Part shown: positions 38,101 through 64,000 of the stretch, piece by piece
How the letters are laid out: each line of letters begins with the position of its first letter
Position numbering within the stretch: position 1 is the first letter of the stretch
Notes under the pieces: generated by a model
The model's input: only the letters and a program-made list of their open reading frames with translations
What the model was told of the DNA's origin: nothing
Databases searched by the model: none
Translations under genes and position numbers: made by a program
Source of the DNA: Anthoceros angustus
Lineage: Eukaryota; Plantae; Anthocerotophyta
Direction: 5' to 3'
Length of the DNA stretch: 64,000 nt
NCBI GenBank assembly: GCA_010909165.1
Contig: VJWM01000144.1
Span: forward strand, 62,001 to 126,000

Positions 38101-38200
38101 AAAGTTGAAGAAACGAAGAATTCTATTCTAAGAAGAATTTTATTCTAAGAAGTCCACTAAGGACGGATTTCCGTCATAGGATTTGGTACTTAACAACTGC
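38101..38200 (-). mobile_element. LINE-like stem-loop/(TTC)n 3' tail
   Basis: GTCCACTAAGGACGGATTTCCGTCATAGGATTTGGTACTTAACAACT, near-identical to 54557-54604, preceded by GAA-rich repeats. Confidence 0.8.
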
Positions 38201-44323: not shown

Positions 44324-46478
44324 ATGGAAGCCCGTCTGTCGTGTGGATTTTCTGACCTGACTGTCCATGTCATGGCCTGAGAAAGGGGCTTACCATCTTG
44401 AAGCCTGTTGCTGAAGTGGTGGATGGTGCTTCCAATGTTGTCATGGCAGATGCGGACCTGCAGTTTGGAATGAGAAGTGTACCTCGGTCTACATTGGTCT
44501 CAACGTCTGCAAGTGAAAGGTATGTTCTCTCCAACGAGGTGTTTGAGTTTTCAGGTGTTTCACTTGTGAGTGTGATCATTGGTGGTGGTGGCAGGGTACT
44601 TGTGTTCCTGACTGGCTCGAGTTCGTTCCGGTTGTGCCATTTACAGGAGCTCAATGACATCCATGGATATCTGTCCGTTTGAGACTCTTCGCAGGGAGGG
44701 AAGGCTAGACCAGGTTCTACCCTTGCTGGAGGACATGGACCACCAGGGAAGTGTGCCTTCAGTGAACATGTACCAGAGGCTACTGCACGCTTGCACAAAA
44801 AGGAAAGCACTGGATGAGGCCAAGCATGTCCATGCTCATATGGCAAAACATGGGTGGGAGTCTAACAATTTCTTGGGAGATCTTATGATCACCACGCTGG
44901 TTAACTGTGGGAGCTTCAGGGACGGGCTAGAGTTATTTCGAAGGCTGTCGTAACGAACAGTTTACTCGTGGACAGCCATTATCTCAGGATAGGACAGTTC
45001 TGGACAATCTCGTAAGGCTCTGTCATGCTATGAACAGATGCAACAAGGAAGGCGTGCAGCCCAATAACTACACATTTGTTAGCCTGTTGAAAGCATGCAG
45101 CAGGTAGGAGGACCGCTCGCAAGTATGGGTTTGAATCTGATATCTATGTCGGAAGCGCTTTGGTTAATATGTATGGTAAGTATGGGAGCATCAGCGAAGC
45201 ACGGCAGGTCTTTGATGGACTGTCCCAGCGCACTGTAGTATCGTGGAATGCCATGCTTTCCGCATATGCTCAACATGACCAAGGAGGAAAGGCGTTAGAC
45301 ATATACCAGCAAATGCAAGCCGAAGGGGTAAGGCCAGATGTCCGCACCTTTGTGGGTGCTGTCCAAGCATGTGGCAGCTCTGCAGAACTGGAACAAAGTG
45401 CAGTTGTAGAGCGGGATAGTGTGAAAGTGGTGTCTCTGCGGGAAGGCAGAAATGTACATGCTAGAGCTAAGGAGAGGGGTTTTGATGCAAATGTGTTTCT
45501 TGGTAGCTCGTTGGTTAGTATGTATGCAAAATGTGGGAGCATCAAGGATGCAGCTCAGGTGTTTGGAAGATTGTCCAAGCGCAATGTGGTTACATGGACT
45601 GCCATGATTCAGATATGTTTCTGGGTAGCAGTTTGATCAATACGTATGCAAAGTGTGGAAGCATCCAAGAGGCCGAACAGGTGTTTGAGAGACTATCCAA
45701 TCGGAATGTAGTTTCATGGAATACCATGATTGCAGCATACGCGCAGCAGGATCAAGGGGAAAACGCTTTGGAGCTTTTGCCCAGATTGAAGTTCAATGCG
45801 TGAGGGCGAATGAGGCAACCTTGCGGTCTGTGTTGAAAGCATGCAGTAGTACAGGAGCTTTGGACACCTGTGCACGCATCCACCGGACTCTTGTCGGGGG
45901 TGATTTGGAGTTCAGTGTGTCTTTGCCGACAAGTCTGATCCAGGCGTATGGCAAATGTGGTAACATGGTCGAGGCTCAGCGTGTTTTTGACTTACTGCCT
46001 CAGCCTGACTTGGTATCATGGAATGCATTACTAGCCGGATATGCTGGCCTAGGAGGTTTTGAGATGTTGATCAGCGCTTTCAGCAGGTGCGTCAAACAGG
46101 AGTTAAACCAGATAGAGTCACATTTTTGGCTCTCCTCACTTCCTGCAGTCATGCTGGCATGGTGGACAAGGGATTGGAATACTTGAATGCATGACACGAG
46201 ATCATGGCACCCCTCCAGAGCTGGAGCATTACTCATGTATGATTGATCTTTTTGGCCGCGGAGGGCTCTTGCGCAAGGCAGAAGAGTTGCTCGTGCAGAT
46301 GCCTATGCAGCCTGATCTGCCAGTGTGGTTATGTTTGCTGGGTGCCTGCCGAAAGCACGGGGATGTGGTGCTGGCAAAGCGTGCCCTCGATGGTGCCTTT
46401 CATCTGCAGGAAGAAAAATCCTTCTTCCGATTAGGTTCAATTATGATGAGACACTCGTCAGCATCCTTCAGCAGCTAA
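44324..46478 (+). pseudogene. PLS-class PPR gene with E-domain remnant; multiple stops, frameshifts and deletions
   Basis: Repeated LVNMYGKYGS..EARQVFD...VVSWNAM motifs and HYSCMIDLFGRGG...WLCLLGACRKHG. In-frame TAA at 44951 and TAG at ~44989; several frame changes. Confidence 0.9.
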
Positions 46479-47259
46479 GTGGAAGATGCAGGTTTCCGTA
46501 TGGTTCAGCCTAGGAATTGAGACAACACTTGTTCCAAGTCCAGCCTAGTCTACAAACCCTGCAACACCACACGAAACCAAGGATGTCGTGCGGCACCGAG
46601 CCCGAGGACTGACACGCTTCGCCATTACTTCTTTGTGATAGGCGTCCTCTGTCGGCCTCGACATTATAGACCCAACAGCCCGTCTCACCACCTTCGTGAC
46701 TATTAGGTGACACGGTTGTACACGCAGAACATCAATTGGTTGGGAGACACGTCTGTACACGCAGAACATTAATGGGTTGCTGAGGCGGCAGCGGCTATCA
46801 CTATAATTCAACACCCGTCGGAATTGATTGCTGCGTTGGATGTTGAATCACAAATTGCCAATGCCGCCGGCGTGTTCTGAATCGTCTCCCCGTTCACCTT
46901 GTTGCGGATTGCACAAGCAGACAGCGACGCCTTCCTTTAGCCTCTCGCCCAAGAGAGAACTTTTAATGGTAGCTCGCGGACAGTGAGAATTTCCGGTCAG
47001 CTTCCAGCCTTGTGCTGAGCTTACTCTTGTCCTCCCTTCGGCGCCAGTGAGTTTTCACTTGAATTGTGATTAGGGGAACATCGCTTCTGTTGTGATAGGT
47101 TGTTGTCCTCGCAGGCGTGTCTGGAGTTGGCAGTAGCGGCATCTGAGGTAGGTCGTTGAGCGCTTGATCCATGTTGGAGATGACGATGGTCCCGTCGTCC
47201 AGGGGGCGATCGACAAGACGATAATCGTTGATCCCAGGAACAGAGGTTCGGGCATCATC

Positions 47260-50200
47260 ATGGGAGGATATCCGATGTGGGTGGAGGGGGCGTGTGAAGG
47301 GAGCGACGGCGAGATTGCCACTCCCGCATGGCCTGACACCGAAAGCGGTCTAGCTGACTCAGGGAACTTCAGGTCGGATTGCAACGCCACGGGAGCTGAA
47401 ACTGCACAACCGAGGTCGTTGGAAGATAATGGGGAGGCGATTGGAAGTGTGTACATGACTCGGAATGTCATGGAGGAGGTTGCGCATGCGAAGGTATTTC
47501 CTGACGGTAGCAGCGGTGCAACTTCGAGGGATGTCGAGGGGCCGACACTGCATAGGCTCATGCGTGTGAGGGCCGACAAGTTGGACCAGAGCTTTGTGAA
47601 GAAGATAATCTTGCCTCCGGATGGTATTGAGGGGTTCTGCAATGACGTCAGGTTCAACTCAGCGGCATGTCGTGATGGAACGACGCTGCTGGATTTCGAC
47701 GCCTTGAACAATGCGTCTGCCCACGTCGTGGGACTGTATGGGAGTAAGAAGGTTCTCGCTCGAGTTTTCTCCAAGCTTGGGTTTCATACTGTCGTGTCCT
47801 CGATGCTGGGCTGTCTTGATGTAGGGATTTATGGCTTTCTTCATCAGGGAGTATTGTTCCTTTTGTATTGGCATGAGGGTGAACGAATGCTGAAGGCCTC
47901 GAGGAAGGATGTGTCTTGCAACTTCATTCGTTATCTGGCGGACTTATGTGCGACTGTCTACATCTGCCTGGAGGATGAAAATGATGTGGACTTGTCTCTC
48001 ATGACCTCGGGGCGGTCTACTGCTGCTGAAAAGCAGCGTACGCAGAGGCTGGAGATATCAGTGGTCAGGCAGCCAGAGAACAGTGTGAAGCTGCGGAAGG
48101 GCTTTGACAACCTTAAGCGTCCTCTGTGCCTTCCAGGGAAGGAGCCAGGCAATATCGGCACATCTTCCTGCTCGGGGCCTAGTTTCAGACTTGCTGGCGG
48201 TCTTCACCGTTGCGCATTTCTTTCTGCATCAGTAGTCCCTCCTAAGAAGATTCGGACGTTGCAGAAAAAGACACTGGACATTCAAAGCTTGGCAAAGGTG
48301 GTTGAGGAGTGGTCTGCCTCCTTCAATCTTGACGTTACTCAACTACCTTACCGTGAACTTTGCCTGTTTCTAGAACATGCTGGTCTTGAAGGGAGCAGAG
48401 ACTTGCCCTTGCTCAGGGAGTCCTTCGAAAGAAGAAGAACGCATTTTCAATTTGCAGAGTTCTTCGAGTCACACAAGTTACAAGAGCGGGAAACGATGAT
48501 GAGAATCTTTGACAGGGCTCAAAAAACGTACTTGCAGCTTTCCCACTCACAGACTGAGCATGCGAGTCACTCTGTCCTCCCTGCTCGCTCCCTGTACATG
48601 CTGAGGTCTACGTTCTTGACACCGAGCGCGGAAGATCTTGTTCAGACAGAAGCTGCCCTGGTTAACATTTGGACAGGTGATGGTGGCCTTCAAGGAGGAA
48701 CAAGTTCTGCATCTTTTATTTTTGTCGGCACAAAGTTCCGTATGCATATGATCAAAGGGGCCCACTGGACCAATGGGGAGTTCCGCGTGCATCGCATTTG
48801 CTCAAAACGGTCTTCAAGTTCGGCGGGGCCTATCCTTTGTGGGGAGGTATTTGTGGCCAGGCCCACAGGTGCTGGAGCAGATATCAAGGTAACATGCAAG
48901 GCTCTGAACGAGGATTGCCCCGAAGGTCCAGTGTTAACGTCTCGTCTTATGAATGTCACCATTCAGAATGTGAGTAGCCAAAATGGAAGGAGTGAGGACT
49001 TGGAAGTGATGCTTAGTACAGGAGGACCATCAGGCGAAGGGATGCTGGCATGGATGGAGTCATATTGCAAGCCTGCTGTGAACATAATGCAGGAAGGGTT
49101 CGATGTTGTGAAAGAAGTTTTTTTTCTTACTGCCCAGAGTGATGCTATCCTTTCTCGAGTTCTAAAAGATGTACAGGGGATCCTCAGTTCGTCTGAGCTT
49201 CTCAACCAATTCAAGGAGCGATTTTCAAAGCAAGCTCTGGCGCAGTTGAAGAAGGAAAGCGCAGTGAATATCGACTCAAAATTCCGCTCCGTTGCCCCAG
49301 AAGTCGAGGAAGATTCCCAGGGACTGATCGTATCAAAGGACCCCCAGCAGTGGAAACCACTGCGGGAGCTGTTGCGAAGGGTTTCTGATGAAGCCTGTGC
49401 CGAAGTTTCACGCGCAGTAGAGGAAATGGTGAAGAGAGAACTATGCCCCATGTTGTGGACGAAGATAGAGTTTGAAGCAAAGCGTGATGCCAACCGCTTG
49501 GAACAGTCCTTTGAAAAGGGGGAAAGGCAATTAGTGACCAGGTTACAAGAGCAGCTACTTGGGGGGACACGTCGAGAAAATTGTCTGTCCGTCCGAAGGT
49601 GCATCTTCCAGCGTGGTCAGAGAGAGTCCTTCATTGCTAAAGCTCTCACTTTTGTTTCACGTCGCAGCTCAGAAGGTGAAAGCTGTGACAAGCTGGAGGT
49701 TCATTTTGAGTCAGAAGAACAAACAGACAGTCAGCGAATCGCCTGGAATATTGAAGAGCTTACACCAATGAAGAAGGATTTGGACGCTTCCATGTGCAAT
49801 TACGGGCACCTCATCATCCCAAAGTGTTCTCAAAACTACAGGTTGATCGAGGTAGACCCAAACTCAGAGAGGCTATTTCAAGTGGTTGCGGTGAAATCCG
49901 GTGAAGTTTTAGTGTTCGTGGAGGATCTTAAACAGCCAGCACTTCATCTCTTCGTGCTCCCGAGGCTGGGAGTAGACATAAAAGGCATGAATCCTGTGAA
50001 GACCTTCAAGAGGGGTTACGACATTGTGGCAGTGGATGAAGTATCCAAGCTTGTTGGCTTGTATGATAGGGAAATTGGCACAATCGCCATCCTGCGCCTT
50101 GACAAATCATTCCATCACTCGGACTGGTCTGGAGTTACCTTGAATCTCTCGGGGTACTCCGAAATTAGGATTTTGACTTCTATGTCCTTCATCCCTGGCC

Positions 50201-53200
50201 GGGGGGAAATGGTGCTAGTTGACGAAGATTTCAAAGTTCGGGTGTTCGAGATCAGCCATCCTGCGATGTTGAGACCAGGGCATATTCAGTTACCGGGACC
50301 AGGGCATAACATTTGTGTTTCCACAGATGGATATTGTTTACTGGCCTTGTATAAGTCCCTTGCAGATGGACCTGCGGAAGCAGCAGAGCGCTTGACGCAA
50401 CGCAGTGACCAGAGTGAACATACCCAGCTTGCAGTGGACGATTCTGCTGAAGGTTCTTTAAAGATTGAGGTCTACCTGCTTGGGGAATCAATGTGTCATC
50501 TCAAGACACTCTTCCTTGACTACGCAGTAGCAGACGTAAGAAGCATTAATGCAGCTGTGGTGGCCTTTGGATCACAGGTCCATCTCGTACTTCTGGATGC
50601 TTCAAGGCCGGACAGAGGCATATGCTCAAAAGTCATTGAGATCACAACGGCTTCCGAAGTCTGCCAGCTGCAACATATGTATAGAGGTCGGCAGACTGCC
50701 ATTTCTTCTGAAAGAACTGAAAAGGGTGGCCATGGCTGTCCGGCTTTAGACTATGTCTACCACATATTTGAGAAGTATGCCACGAGCCCCCCTCTGATCC
50801 AGAAGACAAGATATCTCCATCTCCATCTGGTTTTGGCTGGTGAATCCAAGGAGAAACAGGAGGCTTTGAAGCGCAGCTCTGTGAGTTACGTCAATTGTTC
50901 CTTGAACAAGCTGGCACGAGATAAAGGGAAACAGTTCTCGCAGCTGAGAATAGCTGTTTCCGCAGGCACTGTGGATAGCTACATTGTCCATAATATCCTT
51001 TTGGAGAGCACGGAAGGTAGGAACATTGTGAATTTAGGGGATTGGGTGCGACAACTTGTTTGCCTTGTGCCCATTCAAATAGCCCGAGCCGAGAAGAATA
51101 CCCTGCGGCCTTTAGTAGACGGTCTGCAAAATCCCAACCTGAATTATGCAGATGCAGTGGGGCTTGCTCAGGCTCTACGATTTGGTTTCTACGACTCCGT
51201 GTTAGCCCACTGGTCTGGGAATATCAAAGTGATATCGTCCATGGGTAAGCAGAGCAGTGGTAAGTCCTACCTGCTGAACCATTTGGCTGGTTCTTTATTC
51301 GATGTGGCTGGAGGCCGATGCTCAGACGGAGTGTGGATGACAATGCGTGCATCCCAAAGCTGCTTATACGTAATTCTGGACTTCGAGGGCCTGGGAAGCT
51401 TTGAGAGAAGCGAGCAGGAGGATATGCTATACTCTGTTCTAAATGCATCTGTAAGCAATATCACGATATTCACTAACAAGGTAAGGCATTCAATCTGTCC
51501 TTGTGGATTTCGGTACTGAGTGTACAGCAACGCATAGGGCTAACCACACGATCTGGACAGGATTTTCATGTTGACAAGGAAATAGGAGCTGTCTTTGACC
51601 GTCTTGAGAATGGCGTAAGCTTGGTTACGCGGGACAACCGGCTCTTTAAGGGCATCTTGTATATGGCCATCAAAGACGTGGATATATCAGACGTGGATGA
51701 CGTGAAAGAAGAATTCTCGGCGAAGATACAGCAAAGATGTGACAAATCTCAACACTGCTTTCTCACAAAGATGTACGGCGGGGGGGTTGAGATAGCAGCG
51801 ATGCCACCCTTCCAAAAGTTGGAATTTCACGACAGTGTTGCCGCTGTAGCTACAGCTTTAGAGGAATTGGAAGCTGTCCACCGCAATGGCAACAACTTTG
51901 CAGTAGATCTGAAGCTGGTAATGGCTCAGATAACTGCCAAGGATTGGTCTCCAATTGACTCAAAGCGCTTAGCTTTGAAACTGGAGCTCCTCAAGAGACA
52001 CATGAATGCAGCGATCGCTATGGGAAAGGTGATGAGCAAGGCACACCATGTTCTGAGAAACTTTGCAACGCAGGAGGAAGTGGCTGATATCCCTGTTGAG
52101 GTTGACGGTGTGGTCTTCCATCTTAGTGACACGGACTTGAACCTGTACCCTCACGAGGACAGCCAAGAGATGGGTGAGATACTTCAGACCCTGAATGATC
52201 ATTTCCAAGGTGTAGAAAAGCGGACTGGTGTGGATGATGAGCGGTGGCACACTTCCTTTGAGAAATTTCTCATGGCATTGGCTGATAGGCGGAGGGGGAG
52301 AATTCTTGAATGGATCAGGTGCAACACAGCAGAGTTCCAGCAGGAGGATGGTGATGTTCAGAAGCTTCGTTCGGAAGCTATTGCCACGCTGGCTGAAGTC
52401 AAGCAGAGTCTGTCCCTCTGTAGCAGCAAATGCGAGACCTGTTTCCTGCGATGCGTTATTTCGAAAGGTCATCCAGGCCTGCACACGTGCAGGGGGAAGC
52501 ATTACTGCTCGGACGTTTGTACGTTTTGCTCTGAGGAGCAATTGACGAGCTTGCTGTCTAGTGCGTGTGGCCATCTCTCGGGACATGAAGGTCCACACGA
52601 CTGTAAGTGCAGAAGTCACACTTGTGCAAAGGATTGTTCTCTTCTCAAGTCATCCACCTGCAATCGGACTTGTGCCATGAAGCCTGGACATGGTGGGGAC
52701 CACAGGTGCGATACCAAGCAGCACTTGTGCGCAGAGAAGTGCTCTTTACCGGAGTGCAGAAACCTCTGCACTATCAGTGTTGACGGCGGAGAACATGACG
52801 ACCATATCTGTCATGAAAGGATGTGTCCCATGACGTGCATCGTGGACGGGTGCAACAGGAAGTGCATATTCGGGGACCACTTTCATTCTGTTACCTCTGC
52901 TAGGCATTTCTGCGGCAACGAGCACACTTGCAAGAAGCAGTGTGAGGCGGATGGAATGTGCGAGATTGTGACACAGGTGGTGAAGAAGACCAAGGGTTTC
53001 GATGGGAAGCGATATCGCTTTGAAGACGAGCAAGTTTCTGAGCAGAACGGGGTCAGGAAATCTTGCTGTATCCCGATTCCACCCTGGAAGTTAAAGCACG
53101 AGGGGAGGCACTGTCACAGTGTCAACCCCAAAGCAGTGCACCTTTGCACAACAAGATGTCCAGCTTGTGCATACTTCTGCAATCGTCCCATGGGGCATCT

Positions 53201-54296
53201 GGGCTTACATGACACCGCACACGGAGACATGAGGAACGTCAATTTTGTGGCAGGGTCAGAGGACATCGACCTTGTGGACTGGAAGTATGCTCGGGGAGGG
53301 TCCGGTGTGGCCGAGATGTGCGTTGTACATTGTAAAACCCAAGGCCGCGGGCACATCCACTCGGTCAGGTCTGGTGCCCATGATGGAAGCAAGGAGGGGG
53401 CAAGGCATCAGACTGGACGGCATGGGCCTGAGACGACTGTCCCCAAGACTGCAATGACTCACAAGGCATACTGGAAGCACTTGATGTTCAAGGATCCCTG
53501 CCAAGCGCGGGACCAGAGGCAGGTCGAGATGTGTCGCTCGGAAGATCATGCATCTGCAACCGCGGCATCGCGACAGCGATCCTACTGTACTGAGAGGTTG
53601 TGGGACAAATCTGTCAGGAGTACAGGATCTACAACTATGGAAGGGTATGCGACGGAGAACGGCCATGCCGTGGGCTGCAACAAGATGAAAAATGCTCCAT
53701 GCCACCTAGTGTTCGTCATCGACAGGTCCTACTCTATGGGCTCTACAGATGTGAAGCCAACACTGGCAAGATTTGCAGCCCTCAACAACCGGCTGGGCTG
53801 CGTGTACGAAGCCGTCACCCGATTCATCCGGACTCGGATTGCAGATGGTCAGCTAGATGTGGTATCCATAGTCCTCTTCCGCCAGCAAGCCATCATCGCC
53901 GTGGAGAGACAGCCCATTTCTGAGAACCTTCTAGATGGTCTCCCGCAACACTCCAAGATCCGTGGAGGCGCCATCTACTCATGCGGCCTGGATCTGGTAC
54001 AGCAGATTCTACAGCGAGCTTCTGCGGATGCCTCGATCCTAGGCAAGCAGCCTGCTGTCATCTTCCTGAGTGGCGGCGCAAATTGCGGTGTCACGGATCC
54101 GGTGGCCATGGTGAAGAAGATGAAAGACCGCGACAACAATCTCGTCTTCCACACGATTCGCTTCCGTGCAGACAATAAGGACGAGGAGACATTGCAGAGG
54201 ATGGCAGCCTCCGGCGCGGGGAAGTACCAGGTCTGCATCCACGGAGTGCAGCTAACAAGGAGCTTTGAAGGTTTAGCCAAGAGTTTGAGGACATGA
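47260..54296 (+). CDS. Giant (~2318 aa) GB1/RHD3-superfamily (VLIG-like) GTPase with beta-propeller-like region, Cys/His zinc-finger array and C-terminal VWA; exons 47260-51480 and 51561-54296
   Basis: An 80-bp GT-AG intron joins two long ORFs in frame. G1 GKQSSGKS (51244), G2 GRCSDGVW, G3 LDFEGLG, G4-like IKDV. Repeated C-x3-C...C-x4-H-x3-H-x-C units at ~52420-53350. VWA FVIDRSYSM at 53721. The ATG position is supported by the aligned ATG of copy 2, but upstream exons are not excluded. Confidence 0.88.
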
Positions 54297-54531
54297 GGTA
54301 GTCTTGAGCCATGTGCGGGCCTTCAAGAGGGGCCTTCAAGAGCAAGTTGCAAGATTCTAAATTTTTCCAGTTGCAAGATCTTTCCACAGAGCATTCTGCA
54401 ATTCATGTCTCGTGCAGAGACGTCTGTAAATGTTCTTCAAGCTTGTGGTGCAATCTCTCAGGATGGAGATCTTACAGTTGGGCAAAAGTCAGTGGTCTTG
54501 GGGCATGCGGAATGCTTGCAGACAAGGGGAT

Positions 54532-55050
54532 AGAAGAAGAAGAAGAATTTTATTTTAGTCCGCTAAGGACGGATTTCCGTCATAGGACTTGGTACTTAAC
54601 AACTTGTACCATGGTGTGCCTAAGCTACTTAGGCTGGGCATTCACTCCCTTTAGGAACCCCATCTAAGTACCGATCTAAGATAATCATGACGTCCTTATA
54701 AATGTGTGTCCATTTGGCCTAAGCCATTTGGATAGGTGCATCCATAAACGGGAGTCACGTCAAGATCCAGTCACTAAATGGAGGAAGGAGATTCATGCAT
54801 GCGCTGGCTACTCAGTGGTCCCTAGGGACTGGACGATGCAAATGCAAAGTATGACTTCCCAGCAGCCAGTCAGGAGTTAGGGAGAATGCAACAGGCAGCC
54901 ATCAATCTCCACATACTTAGATGAAACAGTTAAGCCTCTCGAAATGTCAAGTCAGATCTTGCTAGCTGAGGTGTTTGAAGCAGCAAGCTACAGAATATCT
55001 GGAAGCTGTGATTTTACAGTCTTACCACGACCTCCTACTCAGAACGGTCA
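54532..55050 (-). mobile_element. 3' fragment of a LINE-like element with stem-loop, AATAAA and (TTC)5 tail; upstream boundary approximate
   Basis: Minus strand ends GTCCTATGACGGAAATCCGTCCTTAGCGGACTAAAATAAAA(TTC)5. Confidence 0.7.
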
Positions 55051-56640: not shown

Positions 56641-59600
56641 ATGGGAGGAGGTCCAGAACTGTTGGAGGGAGCGTCGGAATTGAGCGGCGATGAGGTTTTG
56701 ACCCCGCGTGGCCTGATACCGAAAGCGGTGTAGCTCACCCAGGGAGTTCATATCAGTAAGGAGCAGTGGGGATGCGGCAATGGCGCTCCTCTAATTTGTG
56801 TTGCATCCTCGCCTGTGAGCCAGCGGGTTGAAATAATTGATTCCCTCGTTTTGCGAGGGAAGACGGGGAGGTTGATGTAGCCGACGCTGGTGAGTGCGGT
56901 TCTCCTCCTGTTGTTGTTCCTCACCCTGTCTTGGAGGTTGAGGCCGTTGGAGCTGAAACTGCATCCCTGGTGGGGTTGGAAGATGACCGGGAGAAGGTTG
57001 AGAGAGTTTCCGTTCCCCCGAATGTGAGGCCGGGGGTTGCGAAGGTGTTACCTGATGCTAGCAGCGATGCAAGTGTTGAGGGGCCGACTCTGCACAGGCT
57101 CATGCACCTGAGGGATGATAAGCTGGATCAGAGCTTTGTGGAGAAGGTCGTCTTACCTCCAGACGAGATTGTGAAGTTCTGCAATGAGGTCAGACTGAAG
57201 TCAGCAGCGTGTCGTGATGGAAAGACGGTGCTGGATTTCAATGCGTTGAACAACGAATCTGTACACGCTGTGGGACTGTATGGGAGCAAGAAAATTCTCG
57301 CTCGAATTTTCTCGGAGCTTGGGTTGCAGACTGTGGTGTCCTCGATGCTTGGCTCTCTTGATGTAGGGATTTATGGCTTTCTTCATCAGGGAGTATTGTT
57401 CATCTTCTATTGGCATGAGGGTGAGCGAATGCTTGAGGCCTCCAGGAAGGATGTGTCTTGCAACTTCATTCGTTATGTGGCGGACTTGTGTGCCACTGTT
57501 TACATCTGCCTGGACGATGAAAATGACGTGGATTTGTCTCTCATGACCTCGGGGCACTCTACTGCTGCCTCTATAAAGCAGCGTACGCGGAGGCTGCAGA
57601 TATCAGTGGTCAGGCAGTCAGAGAACGATTTGAAGCTGCGGAAAGGCTTTCACAACTGTTCTTCTATCCTCACAGGGAAGAAGCCAGGCAATGTCGAGAC
57701 ATCTTCCTGCTCGGAGCGTGGTCTCAGACTTGCGGGCGGTCTTCACCGTTGCGTTTTTCTTACTTCATCACGTGTCCCTCCTAAGAAAGTTTTGAATCCA
57801 CATCAGAAGACTGTGGAGATTCGAAACTTTGCAAAGCTTGTTGAGGAATGGTGTGCTTCCGCTAATCTTGACTTCATTCAACTACCTCACCGTGACTTTT
57901 GCCTGTTTCTAGAGCATGCTGGTCTTGAAGGGAGCAGAGACTATCGCGCGCTGAAGGATTCCTTCGAAGTACGAAGAAAATCTCTAAAGGAAAAGTTTTA
58001 CAACTTAGAGGAGCGCTTGCAGGATGAAGAAAAGAAGATTTTGAATATTCTAAACGGAGTTCAAAATGCGTACTTGAAGCTTTACCATCCATGGGCTGAG
58101 AGCCTTGTTGCGACCTCTGAGGTTGACTCGTCCGGTGGAGCCTCCTCACCCGTGCAGAGTGCGTTCGAACCCAACGATGTGCTTCAGGCAGAAGCTGCCC
58201 TGGTTAACATCTGGACAGGTGACTGTGCGGTTCAAGCAGGAGAAAAGTCTGAATCTTTCATTTTGTTGGAAGAACCAGATTGCTTACGTGCAAGGCTCTG
58301 AATGATCATGGCCGACGGGACCTCATGGCGCACTGAGAGCTATGACACTGACGAGTTCATCGTGGTTAGCTTTTCCTCAGCACGGTCTTCAAGATCGGCA
58401 GGGCCTATCCTTTATGGGGAGGAATTTGTGGCCATAGCCAGAGGCGTTGTAGCAGAGAACCAGATTAAGCTTACGTGCAAGGCTCTGAATGAGAATTTTC
58501 CGGAAGGTCCTGTGTTAACGTCTCGATATATGAGCGTCACCATCCAGCATGTCAGTATCCAAAATCGAAGTATTAAGAAAGTGGCCCAATTGATGCTTAG
58601 TACAGGAGGACCATCAGGCGAAGGGATGCTTGCATGGATGGAGTCATATGGCAAGCCTGTTGTCCACCCTATCCAAGAAAGCATCGATACTCTGGTCTCT
58701 GCAGTTGAAAATTCTTCGATCAACAGTGACACCATCGTTGCTCGAGTTTTACAAGCTGCACACGAGGTCTTGAAGTCGTCTGAGCTTCTCATCCAATTTA
58801 AGAAGCGATATTCAAAGCAAGCTCTGGCGCAGTTGAAAATTCTTCGATCAACAGTGACACCATCGTTGCTCGAGTTTTACAAGCTGCACACGAGGTCTTG
58901 AAGTCGTCTGAGCTTCTCATCCAATTTAAGCGATATTCAAAGCAAGTTATGGCGCAATTGTTGAAGGAAAATGAAGTGAACATGGACTCCAAAAGCCCCA
59001 CCCAGGAGGCGGAAAACGCGTTCAACCTCGTTGCCCCTGAGGAGAGGAACTACTCCTGCAACTGGTGCGGAAGGTTTATGTTGAAGCCCGTGTTGAATTT
59101 TCGCGCGCAGTACAGACAATGGTGAAGAAGGAACTATGCCCCATGTTGATGAAGAAGATGGAGTTTGAAGCAAAGCATAATACCACTTTCCTAGAGCAGT
59201 CCTTTCGAAAGGAGGAAAGGGAATTTGTGACTAGCTTGCAGCAGCAGCTGTCCAGAGGGACACTTCGAGAGCGTCGTCTGTCTGTCCGAAGTTGTATCTT
59301 TCAGCGTGGTGTGAAAGAGACCTTCCAACCTAAAGCTTTACTTAAAACTATCGGTTTGCTTCGCAGCTCAGAAGGTAAAAGCTGTGACAAGCTGGAGGTT
59401 CATTTTTTGTTGGAAGAACCAGACAGTGAGCGGCTCGCGTGGACCATAGCTGAGCTTACACCGATGAAGAAGATGGAGTTTGAAGCAAAGCATAATACCA
59501 CTTTCCTAGAGCAGTCCTTTCGAAAGGAGGAAAGGCAATTTTGTGACTAGCTTGCAGCAGCAGCTGTCCAGGGGACACTTCGAGAGCGTCGTCTGTCTGT

Positions 59601-62600
59601 CCGAAGTTGTATCTTTCAGCGTGGTGTGAAAGAGACCTTCCAACCTAAAGCTTTACTTAAAACTATCGGTTTTCTTTCAGGCCGCAGAAGGTAAAAGCTG
59701 TGACAAGCTGGAGGTTCATTTTGTTGGAAGAACCAGACAGTGAGCGGCTCGCGTGGACCATAGCTGAGCTTACACCGATGAAGAAAGATTTGGACGCTTT
59801 CATGTGACCTGGGCACCTCATCATCCCAAAATGTTCGGAAAACCACAGGTTGATTGAGGTCGACCCAAACTTACAGAGGCTATTTCAAGTAGTTGCGGTG
59901 AAATCTGGTGAAGTTTTAGTGTTCGTGGAGCATCTTGAAGAGCCAGCAGTTCATCTCTACGTGCTCTCGAGGTTGGGTGTAGAGATACAAGGCATGAATT
60001 CCGTCAAGAGATTCAAAAGAGGTTACGACCTTATGGCTGTGGACGAAGTCTCGAAATTTGTTGGCCTCTATGATAGGAAAATGGAAAAAATCGAGATCCT
60101 GCGCCTTGACGAATCCTTCCGCCACTCGGACTGGTCTGGAGTTACCTTGAATCTCTCGGGGCCTCCATTAGGATTTTGACTTATGTCCTTCATCCCTGGC
60201 CGGGGAAATGGTGCTAGTTGACGAAGATTCAAAGTTCGGGTGTTCGAGATCAGTCAACCTGCGATGCTGCGACCAGGGCATATGCAGTTACCTGGTCGTG
60301 CCCATAAGATTTGTGTTTCCACAGATGGATCTTGTTTAATGGCTTTCTACAAGGCTCTTCCAGACGGACCTTCGGAAGCAGCAGAGGGATGACGGAGAGT
60401 AGTGACGAGAGCGAAGATACAGAGCCTGAAATGGACGAGTCTGCTGAAGGTTCTTTAAAGATTGAGGTCTACTTGCTTGGCGAATCAATATGTCATCTCA
60501 AGACACTCTTGGCTACGCAGTAGCAGACGTAAGAAGCATTGATGCAGCTGTAGTGGCCTTCGGATCACAGGTCCATCTCGTACTTCTGGATTCTTCCAGG
60601 CCGGAGAAAGGAATATGGTCAAACGTCATCGAGATCACAACGGCTTCCGAAGTCTGCCAGCTGCAACATATGTACAGAGGTCGACAAACTGGCATTGCCT
60701 CTGAAAGCACTGAAAAGGGTGGCCATGGCTGTCCGGCTTTGGATTATGTTTACCAGATGTTTGAGAAGTATTCGACGAGTCCCCTTTGATCCAAAAGACC
60801 AGGTATCTCCATCTCCATCTGGTTTTGGCTGGTGAATCCAAGGAGAAACTGGAGGCTTTGAAGCGCAGCTCTGTGAGTTACGTGAAAGGTTCCATGGACA
60901 AGCTGGCACGAGATAAAGGGAAACAGTTCTCGCAGCTGAGGTTAGCTGTTTCCGCAGGCACGGTGGATAGCTACATCGTCCATAATTTTCTTGTGCAGAG
61001 CACGGAAGGTAGGAACATTGTGAATTTAGGGATTGGGTGCGACAACTTGTTTGCCTTGTGCCCATTCAAATAGCCTGAGCTGAAAACAATACCTTGCGGC
61101 CTTTGGTGAACGGTCTGCAAAATCCCAACCTGAATTATGCAGATGCTGTGGGGCTTGCTGAGGCTCTACGATTTGGTTTCTATGACTCCGTATTAGCCCA
61201 CTGGTCTGGGAATATCAAAGTGATATCGTCCATGGGAAAGCAAAGCAGTGGAAAGTCCTACCTGCTCAACCATTTGGCCGGCTCGTTACTCGATGTGGCT
61301 GCAGGCAGATGCACGGACGGAGTATGGATGACTATGCGGGCATCGGAAAGCTGCTTATATGTCCTTCTGGACTTCGAGGGCCTGGGAAGCTTTGAGAGAA
61401 GCGAGCAGGAGGATATGCTCCTCTCTATTCTGAATGCAGCTGTAAGCAACATCACCATATTCAACAAAACGGTAAGACATCCAATCTGACCTTGTGGATT
61501 TGGTCATTATGATGCGTGGTGCCGTAACACATAGGGCTGACCCCATGATGTGGACAGGATTTTCATCTGGACAAGGAAACAGAAGCCGTGTTTGAACGCT
61601 TTCAGAATGGCGTCAGCTTGGTAAAGCAGGACAGCCGGCTCTTTAAGGGCCTCTTTTACATGGCCATCAAAGACGTGGATACATCAGACGTGGATGACTT
61701 GAAAGAGGAGTTCTCAGCGAAAATACAGCAAATATGTAACAAATCGCCAGACAACTTTCTCACAAAGATGTACGGCGGGGCGGTTGAGATAGCGATGCCA
61801 CCCTTCCAAAGGTCGGAATATCACGAGAGCGTTGCTGAGGTAGCTGCAACTGTGGAGGAATTGGAATCGGTCCACCATGGCAACAACTTTGCAGTAGACC
61901 TGAAGCTGGTAATAGCTCAGATCACCGCCAAGGATTGGTCTCCAATCGACTCGAAGCGCTTAGCTTTGAAACTGGAACTCCTGAAAAGACACATGAATGC
62001 AGCGATCACTATGGGAAAGCTGATGAGCAAGGCAGACTATGCACTGACGAACTTTGCAACGCAGGAGGAAGTGGCTGACATCCCTGTTGAGGTTGATGGT
62101 GTGGTCTTTCATCTTAGTGACACTGACTTGGAACTGTACCCTTACGAGGAGACCCAAGTGATGGGTAAGATTGTTCAGACTCTGAATGATCATTTCCAAG
62201 GTGTAGAGAAGCGGACTGGTGTGGATGATGAGAGCTGGCACACTTCCTTCGAGAAATTTCTCATGGCATTGGCTGATAGACGGAGGAGCAGAATTCTGGA
62301 ATGGCTCAGGTGCAACACAACAGATTTTCCGGAGGATGGTGACGTTCAGAAGCTTCGTTTGGAAGCTATTGCCACGCTGGCAGAAGTGAAGCAGAGCCTG
62401 TCCCTGTGTAGCTGCAAGTGCGAGAAGTGTTTCCTGAGATGCGTTCTTGAGAAAGGTCATCCAGGCCTGCACACGTGCAGGGGGAAGCATTACTGCTCGG
62501 ACGTTTGTACGTTTTGCTCTGAGGAGCAATTGACGAGCTTGCTGTCTAGTGCGTGTGGCCATCTCTCGGGACATGAAGGTCCACACGACTGTAAGTGCAG

Positions 62601-64000
62601 AAGTCACACTTGTGCAAAGGATTGTTCTCTTCTCAAATCATCCAACTGCAACCGGACCTGTGCTATGAAGCCTGGACATGCTGGAGAGCACAGATGCAAC
62701 ACGAAGCAGCACGTGTGTGCAGAGAAGTGTTCTCTATCGGAGTGTAACAACCTCTGCACTTTCAGTGTTGATTGTGGAGAACACGATGAACATGTTTGTC
62801 ATGAAAGGATGTGTCCCATGACGTGCATCGTGGACGGATGCAACAGGAAGTGCATATTCGAGGACCACTTTCATTCTCTTACCTCTGCTGGGCATTTCTG
62901 GTAACGAACACACTTGCAAGGCGCAGTGTGAGGATGATGGAATATGCGAGATTCTGACAGAGGTGGTGAAGAAGTCCAAGGTTTTGTAGGGAAGCGATCT
63001 TCTTTTGAATACGAGCATGTGTCGGAGCAGGATGGGATCAGGAAAGGTTGCTGTATCCTGATTCCACCCTGGGAGGCTAAACACGAGGGCCGGCACTGCC
63101 ACACTGTCAACCCCAATGCAGTACACTTTTGCACCACAAGATGTCCTGCTTGTGCATACTTCTGCAATCTTCCCATTGGGCATCTGGGCTTACATGACAC
63201 CACACACGGAAACATGAGAGACGTCAATTTCGTGGCAGAGTCAGAGGACATCGACCTTGTGGACAGGAAATATGCTTGGGGAGAATCCGGTGTGGCCGAG
63301 ATGTGCGTTGTACATTGTAAAACCCAGCGGCACATCCACTTGGTCAGGTCTGGTGCCCATGGTGGAAGCAAGGAGGGCAAGGCATCAGACTGGACGGCAT
63401 GGGCCTGAGACGACTGTCCCCAAAGATGAAATGAGCCACACAGCTTACTGGAGGCACTTGAGGTTCAAGGATCCCTGCGCGGGACCAGAGGCAGGTCGAG
63501 ATGTGTCGCTCGGAAGATCATGCATCTGCAACCGCGGCATCGCGACAGCGATCCTACTGCACTGAGAAGTTGTGGCACAAACCTGTCAGGAGTACAGGAT
63601 CTACAACTATGGAAGGGTATGCGACGGAGAACGGCCATGCCGTGGCTGCAACAAGATGAAAATGCTCCATGCCACCTAGTGTTCGTCATCGACAGGTCCT
63701 ACTCTATGGGCTCTAGATGTGAAGCCAACACTGGCAAGATTTGCAGCCCTCAACAACCGGCTGGGCTGCGTGTACGAAGCCGTCACCCGATTCATCCGGA
63801 CTCGGATTGCAGATGGTCAGCTAGATGTGGTATCCATAGTCCTCTTCCGCCAGCCAAGCCATCATCGCCGTGGAGAGACAGCCCATTTCTGAGAACCTTC
63901 TAGATGGTCTCCCGCAACACTCCAAGATCCGTGGAGGCGCCATCTACTCATGCGGCCTGGATCTGGTACAGCAGATTCTACAGCGAGCTTCTGCGGATGC
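56641..64000 (+). pseudogene. Second tandem copy of the giant GTPase-ZnF-VWA gene; frameshifted as given and truncated by the window end
   Basis: Collinear with 47260-54030; same intron position (61472-61557); GKQSSGKS/GRCTDGVW/LDFEGLG. In-frame stop at 58299, internal duplications and many 1-3 bp indels (real decay or consensus error). Confidence 0.85.

What the first reader, a model, noticed from the sequence alone, without database searches (positions are those of the whole stretch)
47260..54296. Giant plant VLIG/GBP-like GTPase fused to propeller-like, zinc-finger-array and VWA domains: candidate undescribed immune/conflict machine
Seen: one ~2318-aa, two-exon gene ordered as N-terminal domain, helical region, WD40-like beta-rich region (~49830-50660), P-loop GTPase (GKQSSGKSYLLNHL...GRCSDGVW...DFEGLG.FERSEQED), helical stalk, ~300 aa of NFX1-like Cys/His repeats, then VWA. 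Known: these G motifs place it in the GB1/RHD3 superfamily. GxQSSGKS and GRC[T/S]xG are VLIG/GVIN-like, and LNHL/ERxExD are RHD3/Sey1-like. That superfamily includes animal GBP/VLIG and plant GBPL immune GTPases. No transmembrane hairpin is evident, so it is not an ordinary RHD3 fusogen. Inference: a propeller sensor, GTPase switch, Zn-finger scaffold and VWA adaptor in one chain, in a tandem diversifying locus, looks like a cell-autonomous defence protein. I know of no functional characterisation of this architecture in plants.
Basis: partly seen in the sequence, partly recalled or inferred. Interest (0 to 1): 0.88.

Follow-up and report, generated by a model that had tools for sequence, protein, structure and literature searches.

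The report
Giant VLIG-like GTPase gene, non-flowering plant
This is an intact two-exon gene for a 2318-residue soluble GTP-switch protein related to animal defence GTPases (GVIN1, GBP); it belongs to an old, unstudied eukaryotic family not seen in flowering plants, and its function is untested.

Summary
Exon 1 (47260-51480) and exon 2 (51561-54296) are joined across an 80-nt GT-AG, phase-0 intron. Seven homologues run unbroken across the junction, and a moss and a liverwort have an intron at the same site.

- **Confirmed:** a six-blade-like beta-propeller (AlphaFold2 plus two fold searches), a GBP/VLIG-class G domain, a conserved Cys/His block of about 410 aa, a VWA domain, and no transmembrane segment.
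- **Not confirmed:** the "NFX1-like" label and diversifying selection (Ka/Ks below 1 in every domain measured).
- **New here:**
  - The N-terminal domain looks like a second, degenerate P-loop/large-GTPase fold. Human GVIN1 was recently modelled with two such domains.
  - This copy has lost a VWA metal-site Asp that 15 homologues keep.
  - The downstream tandem copy is a pseudogene.

The family has about 400 clusters across eukaryotes and expansions in several lineages. No angiosperm appeared among the hits listed. I found no paper on it.

A defence role is plausible by analogy and by the way the genes expand, but it is untested, and single-copy bryophyte orthologues also fit a housekeeping role. 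RNA evidence could not be obtained.

The scan has already reported this family at three other loci of this genome.

The parts
47260..51480 (+). Exon 1, 1407 codons, starting at the first ATG of the ORF
   Evidence: The ATG context is also present in copy B.
51481..51560 (+). Intron, 80 nt, GT...AG, phase 0; it splits the G domain after G3
   Evidence: One search shows the sequence. Homologues are contiguous across the junction. The moss and liverwort genes have an intron at the same site.
51561..54296 (+). Exon 2, 911 codons plus the stop codon
47260..47535 (+). Variable N-terminal tail, aa 1-92, not alignable to homologues
   Evidence: 0.25 identity among land plants.
47536..48009 (+). N-terminal alpha/beta domain, aa 93-250. 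Probably a degenerate large-GTPase (P-loop NTPase-like) fold. It has VGLYGSKK where GBP has VGLYRTGKS.
   Evidence: The AF2 model has pLDDT 76-88 here. The only non-helical VIA hits are GBP1, atlastin-1, GBP2 and atlastin-3 at Z 5.9-6.4. Foldseek gave weak ARL, atlastin and GBP hits. The Atlas shape search gave an EF-Tu/MMR_HSR1 GTPase, and the Atlas feature search gave GBP, RHD3 and Smg8/9. Ka/Ks is 0.20. There is no sequence-profile support.
48010..49776 (+). Fast-evolving linker and middle region, aa 251-839, of unknown fold (the C-terminal part of the N-terminal model is a long helix)
   Evidence: Identity is 0.26-0.32 among land plants. Ka/Ks is 0.77-0.92. There is no Pfam match.
49837..50664 (+). 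Beta-propeller, aa 860-1135, probably six blades
50707..51189 (+). Conserved region before the G domain, aa 1150-1310
   Evidence: About 50-55% identity to plant homologues. Not modelled.
51190..51480 (+). G domain, N-terminal half. P-loop at 51244-51267. Switch I has Ser at 51322-51324 where other land plants have Thr. DxxG at 51379-51396.
51561..51950 (+). G domain, C-terminal half (exon 2 aa 1-130), with the G4 KD at 51672
51951..52418 (+). Short conserved, presumably helical, region between the G domain and the zinc block (exon 2 aa 131-286)
   Evidence: Alignment. Its fold was not tested.
52419..53660 (+). Cys/His-rich, presumed zinc-binding block (exon 2 aa 287-700)
   Evidence: There are 41 Cys and 33 His. 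About 55 Cys/His columns are invariant in 10 land-plant sequences. The H-x-C-x3-C core occurs 5 times against 0.3 expected. No Pfam, PDB or Atlas match.
53700..54230 (+). VWA domain (exon 2 aa 714-890). DxSxS is kept (53721-53735). The metal-site Asp is replaced by Gly (54072-54074).
   Evidence: VWA_2 scores 27.6 bits against a cut-off of 27, and VWA 24.0 against 23.8.
56641..64000 (+). Tandem paralogue (copy B), a pseudogene that runs off the window's end
   Evidence: More than 20 indels are not divisible by 3, and there are 125-nt and 311-nt insertions.

Best explanation
The gene encodes an intact member of an ancient eukaryotic family of giant, soluble large GTPases of the GBP/VLIG (GVIN) branch of the dynamin superfamily.

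**Shown**
- The gene model.
- A canonical, extremely conserved central G domain.
- A beta-propeller upstream of the G domain.
- A large conserved Cys/His block and a VWA domain downstream of it.
- No membrane anchor.

**Probable**
- The N-terminal domain is a second, degenerate large-GTPase-like fold. That gives an LG-like, linker, LG layout like the one modelled for human GVIN1.

**Inferred mechanism**
- GTP binding and hydrolysis at the central G domain drive G-G dimerisation or higher-order assembly, as in GBP, atlastin and GVIN1.
- The fast-evolving middle region and the propeller select or regulate the target.
- The conserved zinc block plus VWA form a docking platform for partner or effector proteins. 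Oomycete relatives carry a RING E3 domain at that end.

**Most likely biological role (unproven)**
- Cell-autonomous defence or another genetic-conflict function.
- This copy may bind differently through its VWA, because its metal site is incomplete.
For: - **Gene model:**
- **G-domain class (Pfam):** URGCP_GTPase is the best Pfam match in this gene and in homologues. Of the 120 family members listed, all but two carry PF25683.
- **G-domain class (names, structures):** three oomycete members are named "VLIG-type G domain-containing protein" by UniProt. Among solved structures the family profile hits GBP2, GBP1 and GBP5 best (E about 2e-9), then Sey1.
- **Propeller:**
- **N-terminal LG-like fold:** converge on this.
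- **GVIN1 parallel:** the GVIN1 paper models two LG domains and shows a coat forming on cytosolic Burkholderia (bioRxiv 10.1101/2025.03.24.645074).
- **Conflict-like evolution:**
  - There is a tandem copy plus a pseudogene here, and more copies just beyond the window according to scan note s1-300107.
  - Cryptomeria (more than 15 proteins), Mesostigma, an acoel and oomycetes have their own expansions.
  - Relatives are fused to RING, B-box, kinase or AAA+ domains.
  - No angiosperm appears among the hits listed.
- **Conserved core, variable periphery:** identity among land plants is 0.82 in the G domain and 0.26 in the middle region. Ka/Ks is 0.12 against 0.77-0.92.
Against: - There is no functional, expression or localisation evidence.
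- Pfam URGCP and RHD3 scores stay below their curated cut-offs.
- I could not fetch animal VLIG, URGCP, atlastin or RHD3 sequences, so no tree with outgroups was built.
- The N-terminal LG-like assignment rests on weak structural scores (Z about 6, Foldseek E above 0.03, whole-model pLDDT 57). Profile comparisons found nothing.
- Ka/Ks never exceeds 1.
- The moss and liverwort orthologues have no second copy within 10 kb.
- The G and zinc modules are under strong purifying selection, which suits a housekeeping enzyme too.
- This copy has Gly at the VWA metal-site Asp and Ser at the switch I Thr.
Confidence: 0.5

Rival explanations
1. It is a housekeeping giant GTPase. A conserved nucleotide-driven machine would act in an ordinary cellular process, such as organelle or membrane dynamics, ribonucleoprotein or protein quality control, or ubiquitin-linked turnover through the zinc block and VWA. 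The local copies would be mere duplication noise.
For: - The G domain is 82% identical across land plants, and the zinc block has about 55 invariant Cys/His.
- The intron position is conserved from bryophytes to this genome.
- Land-plant sequences form one clade (SH-aLRT 99), broadly in line with vertical descent.
- In Ceratodon and Calypogeia no second copy lies within 10 kb.
- Ka/Ks is below 1 everywhere.
Against: - No angiosperm appeared among the hits listed, and the deep distribution is patchy. That is unusual for a core function.
- Several unrelated lineages show repeated tandem expansion and pseudogenes.
- Relatives are fused to RING, B-box, kinase or AAA+ domains.
- The nearest characterised relatives (GVIN1, GBPs) are defence proteins.
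Confidence: 0.3
2. This copy is a decaying or functionally altered paralogue. The reading frame is still open, but the copy is under relaxed constraint or has changed its binding mode, and other copies in the genome carry the ancestral function.
For: - It has Gly where all 15 land-plant homologues have the VWA metal-site Asp, and Ala at the metal-site Thr position (also seen in one Cryptomeria copy).
- A conserved Cys and a conserved His are lost in the zinc block (C604S, H682D). Ser replaces the switch I Thr.
- Its immediate neighbour is already a pseudogene.
- There is no RNA evidence.
Against: - About 7 kb of reading frame is intact, while the neighbour has more than 20 frameshifts.
- Its rate of change at otherwise invariant sites (9-10%) matches other lone lineage representatives, Selaginella and Riccia.
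- Ka/Ks is 0.12-0.36 in the G, zinc and propeller parts.
Confidence: 0.12
3. It is an RHD3/atlastin/Sey1-type ER membrane fusogen with extra domains.
For: The LNHL and ERxExD motifs recall RHD3. Pfam RHD3_GTPase gives a weak hit (25-28 bits) and Sey1 is hit at E 1.5e-5.
Against: - There is no hydrophobic segment able to span a membrane.
- RHD3_GTPase stays below its 42.4-bit cut-off in this gene and in the four full-length homologues scanned.
- URGCP and GBP score better.
- The architecture is entirely different.
Confidence: 0.02

Closest known systems
GVIN1 / VLIG-1 (very large interferon-inducible GTPase) and URGCP of animals
   Same: - It is a giant soluble protein whose G domain gives its best Pfam match to the URGCP/VLIG model.
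- It probably has a two-LG layout with a linker between, as modelled for human GVIN1.
- The family is multi-copy and expands within lineages.
   Different: - A propeller precedes the G domain, and a Cys/His block of about 410 aa plus a VWA follow it. The GVIN1 model describes none of these.
- The first LG-like domain lacks a P-loop.
- The Pfam score is below the family cut-off.
- Induction by infection and coat formation are unknown here.
GBP1/2/5 of animals and GBPL1-3 of Arabidopsis
   Same: - These are the closest solved structures by sequence profile (E about 2e-9 over G1-G3).
- The P-loop neighbourhood is shared (GKSYL.N), as is DxEGLG followed by an acidic stretch.
   Different: - Only about 100 residues of the G domain align.
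- No GBP C-terminal helical domain was detected.
- There is no CaaX box.
- The protein is four times larger and has unrelated accessory domains.
RHD3 / Sey1 / atlastin
   Same: The same GB1/RHD3-type G-domain superfamily, with weak Pfam and PDB hits.
   Different: No transmembrane hairpin, a score below the family threshold, and a different architecture.
VWA-plus-RING proteins such as plant RGLG ligases, and copines (comparison from my own knowledge, not tested)
   Same: A C-terminal VWA domain; oomycete members of this family add a RING directly after it.
   Different: The window's protein has no RING, its VWA metal site is incomplete, and the rest of the protein is unrelated.
NFX1 / ZNFX1 zinc-finger arrays
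   Same: A Cys/His-rich array with a recurring H-x-C-x3-C core.
   Different: No match to Pfam zf-NF-X1 even at E 10. There are zero matches to the NFX1 consensus pattern as I recalled it, and the spacing after the core differs.

Membership tests
VLIG/URGCP-type large GTPase (Pfam PF25683; PROSITE VLIG-type G) | The G domain matches the family model above its curated threshold | tested here: inconclusive
   It is the best Pfam family, but it scores 33.7-37 bits here and 34-43 bits in full-length homologues, against a cut-off of 55. Only profile positions 187-296 of 396 align. Three oomycete family members carry UniProt's "VLIG-type G domain" name.
VLIG/URGCP-type large GTPase | Two large-GTPase domains separated by a helical linker (the human GVIN1 model) | tested here: inconclusive
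   The N-terminal domain gives only GBP and atlastin as non-helical VIA hits (Z 5.9-6.4), and GTPase or terminase folds in the Atlas. Its P-loop is degenerate and profile comparison found nothing.
VLIG/URGCP-type large GTPase | Induced by infection or an immune signal, and coats invaders | not testable with these tools
GB1/RHD3-type G-domain superfamily (GBP, atlastin, RHD3) | G1-G4 motifs and detectable homology to GBP G domains | tested here: met
   G1, switch I, G3 and G4 are present. Pfam GBP scores 22 bits on the segment and 23-25 bits in three of four homologues, against a cut-off of 21.1. The PDB profile hits GBP2, GBP1 and GBP5 at E about 2e-9 and Sey1 at 1.5e-5.
GBP family proper | C-terminal GBP helical domain (PF02841) | tested here: not met
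   It is not reported in this gene or in the four homologues scanned.
RHD3/Sey1/atlastin fusogens | C-terminal transmembrane hairpin | tested here: not met
   The highest 19-residue Kyte-Doolittle mean is 1.46 in exon 1 and 1.29 in exon 2.
RHD3/Sey1/atlastin fusogens | RHD3_GTPase model above its threshold | tested here: not met
   It scores 19-30 bits against a cut-off of 42.4.
Beta-propeller fold | A closed array of four-stranded blades | tested here: met
   The model has pLDDT 79 and pTM 0.74. Foldseek gave at least 500 matches at E<=0.001, and all 50 listed are beta-propellers. VIA gives Z 14.4 over 220 residues to six-bladed NHL domains.
WD40 repeat family (sequence) | Match to the WD40 repeat models | tested here: not met
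   No Pfam hit on the segment, even at E 10.
NFX1-type zinc finger | Match to zf-NF-X1 or to the C-x(1-6)-H-x-C-x3-C-[HC]-x(3-4)-[HC]-x(1-10)-C pattern (recalled from memory) | tested here: not met
   No Pfam hit at E 10. The pattern has 0 matches; only the H-x-C-x3-C core recurs.
VWA domain | Match to the VWA models above threshold | tested here: met
   VWA_2 scores 27.6 against 27, and VWA 24.0 against 23.8.
VWA domain | Complete metal-ion-dependent adhesion site (DxSxS, Thr, Asp) | tested here: not met
   DRSYS is kept. The site has Ala at the Thr position and Gly at the Asp position, and all 15 aligned land-plant homologues keep that Asp.

The most novel reading that the evidence does not exclude
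Non-flowering plants and many protists keep a counterpart of the animal GVIN1 defence module. This would be a two-LG giant GTPase that assembles on invaders or their replication sites in a GTP-dependent way. It would use a propeller for recognition and a zinc block plus VWA platform to recruit effectors. The system would predate the split of plants and animals and would have been lost in the angiosperm stem.
Probability: 0.3. Interest if true: 0.8.

Novelty: new variant of a known kind. Interest (0 to 1): 0.6.

Why it matters
Large GTPases of the GBP/VLIG class are central to cell-autonomous immunity in animals. Human GVIN1 was shown only recently to coat cytosolic bacteria.

A family with the same kind of G domain exists in bryophytes, lycophytes, ferns, gymnosperms, algae, oomycetes and other protists. 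It probably shares the two-LG layout too, but adds its own propeller, zinc and VWA modules. No angiosperm appeared among the hits listed.

If it acts in defence, it would be an immune layer that Arabidopsis-centred plant immunology has missed. It would also bear on how old coat-forming GTPase defence is. Bryophytes that appear to have a single copy make this directly testable by knockout.

If it is housekeeping instead, it is still a large, conserved, unnamed machine with an unusual zinc-binding block.

Tried and rejected
- The exons were handled separately by reference. Analyses of the whole G domain used full-length homologues instead.
- **Complex prediction:** an LG-domain homodimer (Ceratodon homologue 975-1290, two copies, with GTP and Mg) returned "no answer", score 0.00. 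This is not evidence either way.
- **N-terminal domain:** a profile-profile comparison with the central G domain found nothing. The PDB profile search also found nothing. A profile search for standalone relatives found only split gene models of the same family, with no Pfam domain.
- **Cys/His block:** no hit in the PDB profile search, Pfam at E 10 or the Atlas feature search. The NFX1 label is rejected.
- **First Ka/Ks run:** the run from tblastn pieces was distorted by the pseudogene's frameshifts. I replaced it with a DNA-alignment version. That run ended in an error on the partial VWA stretch because Ks was zero.
- **G-domain tree with outgroups:** this was not possible. The search tools list only the best hits, and all of them belong to this family, so no animal VLIG, URGCP, GBP, atlastin or RHD3 sequences could be fetched.
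- **Literature:** a conflict-systems paper (PMC7159879) does not mention VLIG, GBP or NFX1.
- **Weak matches set aside:** G-domain profile positions 132-215 matched plant TIR NADases at E 0.12-0.3. I take this as chance.
- **Myristoylation:** the MGG start does not fit the usual consensus, as I recall it.
Full report
**1. The observation**

The + strand carries two long ORFs, 47164-51519 and 51501-54296. The first ATG of the first ORF is at 47260. The sequence reads ...AACAAG|GTAAGG...GGACAG|GATTTT..., which gives an 80-nt GT-AG intron (51481-51560) in phase 0. It joins 1407 codons to 911 codons, 2318 aa in all, with the stop codon ending at 54296.

Each exon was used by reference, and full-length homologues stood in where a whole G domain was needed.

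Two independent lines support the splice:
- In seven full-length homologues, exon 1's last residue aligns to residue n and exon 2's first residue to n+1.
- The moss Ceratodon (114-nt intron) and the liverwort Calypogeia (405-nt intron) have a GT-AG intron at exactly the same codon boundary, between ...IFNKK and DFH....

The pseudogene copy has an ATG in the same sequence context (ATGGGAGGA) at 56641, and homology between the two copies begins there.

**2. The parts**

*G domain.*
- G1 is GKQSSGKS (51244). Switch I is GRCSDG. G3 is DFEGLG (51379). G4 is KD (51672).
- Pfam ranks URGCP_GTPase (34-37 bits) above RHD3_GTPase (25-28) and GBP (19-22).
- The ranking is the same in full-length homologues. 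There URGCP and RHD3 stay under their curated cut-offs, while GBP just passes in three of the four scanned.
- A profile of 16 family G domains finds GBP2, GBP1 and GBP5 as the nearest solved structures (E about 2e-9, about 100 residues aligned), then Sey1 (1.5e-5). It finds no atlastin.
- UniProt names three oomycete members "VLIG-type G domain-containing protein".
- The domain is remarkably conserved: 39 invariant columns across plants, a fungus, oomycetes and unnamed protists.

*Propeller.*
- Residues 840-1160 of exon 1, folded with 17 homologues, gave pLDDT 79 and pTM 0.74 with about 20 strands.
- Foldseek returned at least 500 matches at E<=0.001. All 50 listed are beta-propellers.
- VIA-align's best hits are six-bladed NHL domains (Z 14.4, 220 residues, rmsd 3.8), followed by Elp2, Sec12 and PROPPINs.
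- No WD40 sequence model matches.

*N-terminal domain (new here).*
- Residues 93-440 were folded with 15 sequences. The first 148 residues or so are confident (pLDDT 76-88); the rest is poor apart from a long C-terminal helix.
- Four weak lines converge on a P-loop NTPase or large-GTPase fold:
  - Atlas features give Smg8/9, RHD3, Sey1 and GBP.
  - Foldseek gives ARL, atlastin-1, GBP1 and terminases, at E 0.04-0.5.
  - VIA's only non-helical hits are GBP1 (Z 6.4), atlastin-1 (6.2), GBP2 (6.0) and atlastin-3 (5.9), each over the N-terminal half of the LG domain.
  - The Atlas shape search gives an EF-Tu/MMR_HSR1 GTPase (TM 0.52 normalised by the match, 0.24 by the model), Der and terminases.
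- The family motif V-G-[FL]-Y-G-[DS]-K sits where GBPs have V-G-L-Y-R-T-G-K-S. It is one residue short and lacks the Ser/Thr. If the fold is right, the nucleotide site is degenerate.
- Sequence profiles give no support.
- The domain is under purifying selection (Ka/Ks 0.20).
- The point matters because the GVIN1 paper models human GVIN1 as N-terminal domain, LG, helical linker, second LG and C-terminal domain.
- I put the odds of this assignment at about 0.6.

*Cys/His block.*
- It covers about 410 aa (exon 2 residues 287-700), not about 300 aa.
- It has 41 Cys and 33 His. About 55 Cys/His columns are invariant in ten land-plant sequences.
- The H-x-C-x3-C core recurs five times, against 0.3 expected by shuffling.
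- The NFX1 consensus, as I recalled it, has no match. Pfam finds nothing even at E 10, and neither do a PDB profile search or the Atlas.
- "Zinc-binding" is an inference from composition. "NFX1-like" is not supported.

*VWA.*
- It is above Pfam's thresholds.
- The DxSxS motif is kept. This copy has Ala at the metal-site Thr position. It has Gly where all 15 aligned land-plant homologues have the metal-site Asp.

*Other features.*
- No transmembrane segment is present.
- The "stalk" between the G domain and the zinc block is only about 155 aa, and I did not model it.
- The region 251-839 has no assignable fold and is the least conserved part of the protein.

**3. Family and history**

Word-indexed searches found full-length relatives in the following groups:
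- Land plants: Ginkgo, Cryptomeria (more than 15 proteins, many with neighbouring locus tags), Taxus, Ceratopteris, Adiantum, Selaginella, Ceratodon, Calypogeia and Riccia.
- Algae: Klebsormidium, Mesostigma (some fused to AAA+/helicase modules), Galdieria and dinoflagellates.
- Oomycetes, many of them with a C-terminal RING.
- Amoebozoa and a foraminiferan.
- The acoel Convolutriloba.
- The mycorrhizal fungus Ambispora.

Other relatives carry RING/B-box or kinase modules.

No angiosperm appears among the hits listed. The weakest of the 120 listed still has E 5e-59. The G domain is so conserved that an angiosperm orthologue should have ranked high, so absence is likely within the length range searched.

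An exhaustive profile search counted 398 cluster representatives at E<=1e-30 and 745 at E<=1e-10.

In a maximum-likelihood tree (70 rows, quick search), land plants form one clade (SH-aLRT 99). The window's gene sits with moss, liverwort and Selaginella, while ferns and gymnosperms form their own groups. The streptophyte algae do not come out as sister to land plants, and deep branches are long and unresolved. Together with the conserved intron, this argues for vertical descent within land plants. Origins deeper than that remain open.

The source organism was not identified. Its nearest relatives in exon 2 are the moss (50%) and the liverwort (48%).

**4. The locus**

- Copy B (56641 to beyond 64000) has more than 20 indels not divisible by three, a 125-nt insertion and a 311-nt insertion. 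By BLAST, 49458-49776 of copy A matches copy B twice, so the 311-nt insertion looks like an internal duplication.
- Copy A has no disruption in 7 kb, so these are not assembly errors.
- DNA identity is 66-87% over the first 2.4 kb and 82-100% afterwards. The last 470 nt or so inside the window are 99-100% identical, with Ks of zero. That points to recent gene conversion.
- Ka/Ks in copy A's reading frame, by part:
  - tail 0.89
  - LG-like domain 0.20
  - residues 251-440: 0.92
  - middle region 0.77
  - propeller 0.36
  - pre-G region 0.25
  - G domain 0.12 and 0.36 (N- and C-terminal halves)
  - helical region 0.21
  - zinc block 0.36
- Nothing exceeds 1, and the pseudogene's neutral phase inflates these values. 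Diversifying selection is therefore not shown, only a conserved core and a fast-changing linker.
- The same pattern holds among Cryptomeria paralogues and across land plants.
- Scan notes report six more copies starting 2.6 kb beyond the window (s1-300107). They also report single genes on two other pieces of the genome (s1-384827, s1-278046), one of which that note describes as transcribed. I could not check those.

**5. Mechanism and verdict**

- **Shown:** an intact gene for a soluble giant GTPase with a canonical GBP/VLIG-class G domain, a propeller, a conserved Cys/His block and a VWA.
- **Probable:** an N-terminal degenerate LG-like domain.
- **Inferred from the dynamin superfamily:** GTP-driven G-G dimerisation or assembly. 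The one complex prediction I ran gave no verdict.
- **Inferred from conservation patterns and relatives' fusions:** recognition or regulation by the variable region and the propeller, and partner docking by the zinc block and VWA.

A defence role is the likeliest reading. It rests on the nearest characterised relatives, on repeated lineage-specific expansion with pseudogenes, on conflict-type domain fusions and on the lack of angiosperm hits. It remains untested. The bryophyte orthologues, which have no second copy nearby and are strongly constrained, keep a housekeeping role alive.

I found no paper on the family. The family is a new variant of a known kind. This locus is one more member of it, already met by the scan elsewhere in this genome.

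Noticed in passing
window 56641-64000: The tandem paralogue (copy B) is a pseudogene. It has more than 20 frame-breaking indels, a 125-nt insertion near 58838 and a 311-nt insertion near 59420 that looks like an internal duplication. Small indels in its 3' half are almost all deletions.
   Followed up: yes
window 53560-54031 versus 63530-64000: The two copies are 99-100% identical here (Ks zero), although they are only 66-87% identical in the first 2.4 kb. This suggests a recent gene-conversion tract over the start of the VWA region.
   Followed up: partly
window 44654-46478 (+): A pentatricopeptide-repeat gene lies directly upstream. It is broken into at least five ORFs in different frames, all with PPR Pfam hits, and is probably a pseudogene.
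   Followed up: partly
window 54530-54604; also 462-519 (-) and 38130-38198: A short repeat of about 60-70 nt (88-90% identity) lies just after the gene's stop codon, with two more copies in the window. It may be a small dispersed element.
   Followed up: no
related proteins P0051, P0065, P0046, P0049, P0075, P0023: Relatives fuse the same G domain to other modules: AAA+/helicase in Mesostigma, RING plus B-box (TRIM-like) in two unnamed metagenome proteins, a protein kinase in P0075, and a C-terminal RING in many oomycetes.
   Followed up: no
tree: Family members from Klebsormidium and Mesostigma do not group with land plants. In this quick tree the land-plant clade sits next to two dinoflagellate sequences (support 88, long branch). 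The cause could be old paralogy, gene transfer or an artefact; it is unresolved.
   Followed up: partly
family G-domain profile positions 132-215: Weak matches (E 0.12-0.3) to plant TIR-domain NADases in the PDB. Probably chance.
   Followed up: no
L001 (Ceratodon) and L002 (Calypogeia): The bryophyte orthologues have no second family copy within 10 kb on either side. The Ceratodon gene has about six introns and Calypogeia two, against one in the window's gene.
   Followed up: partly
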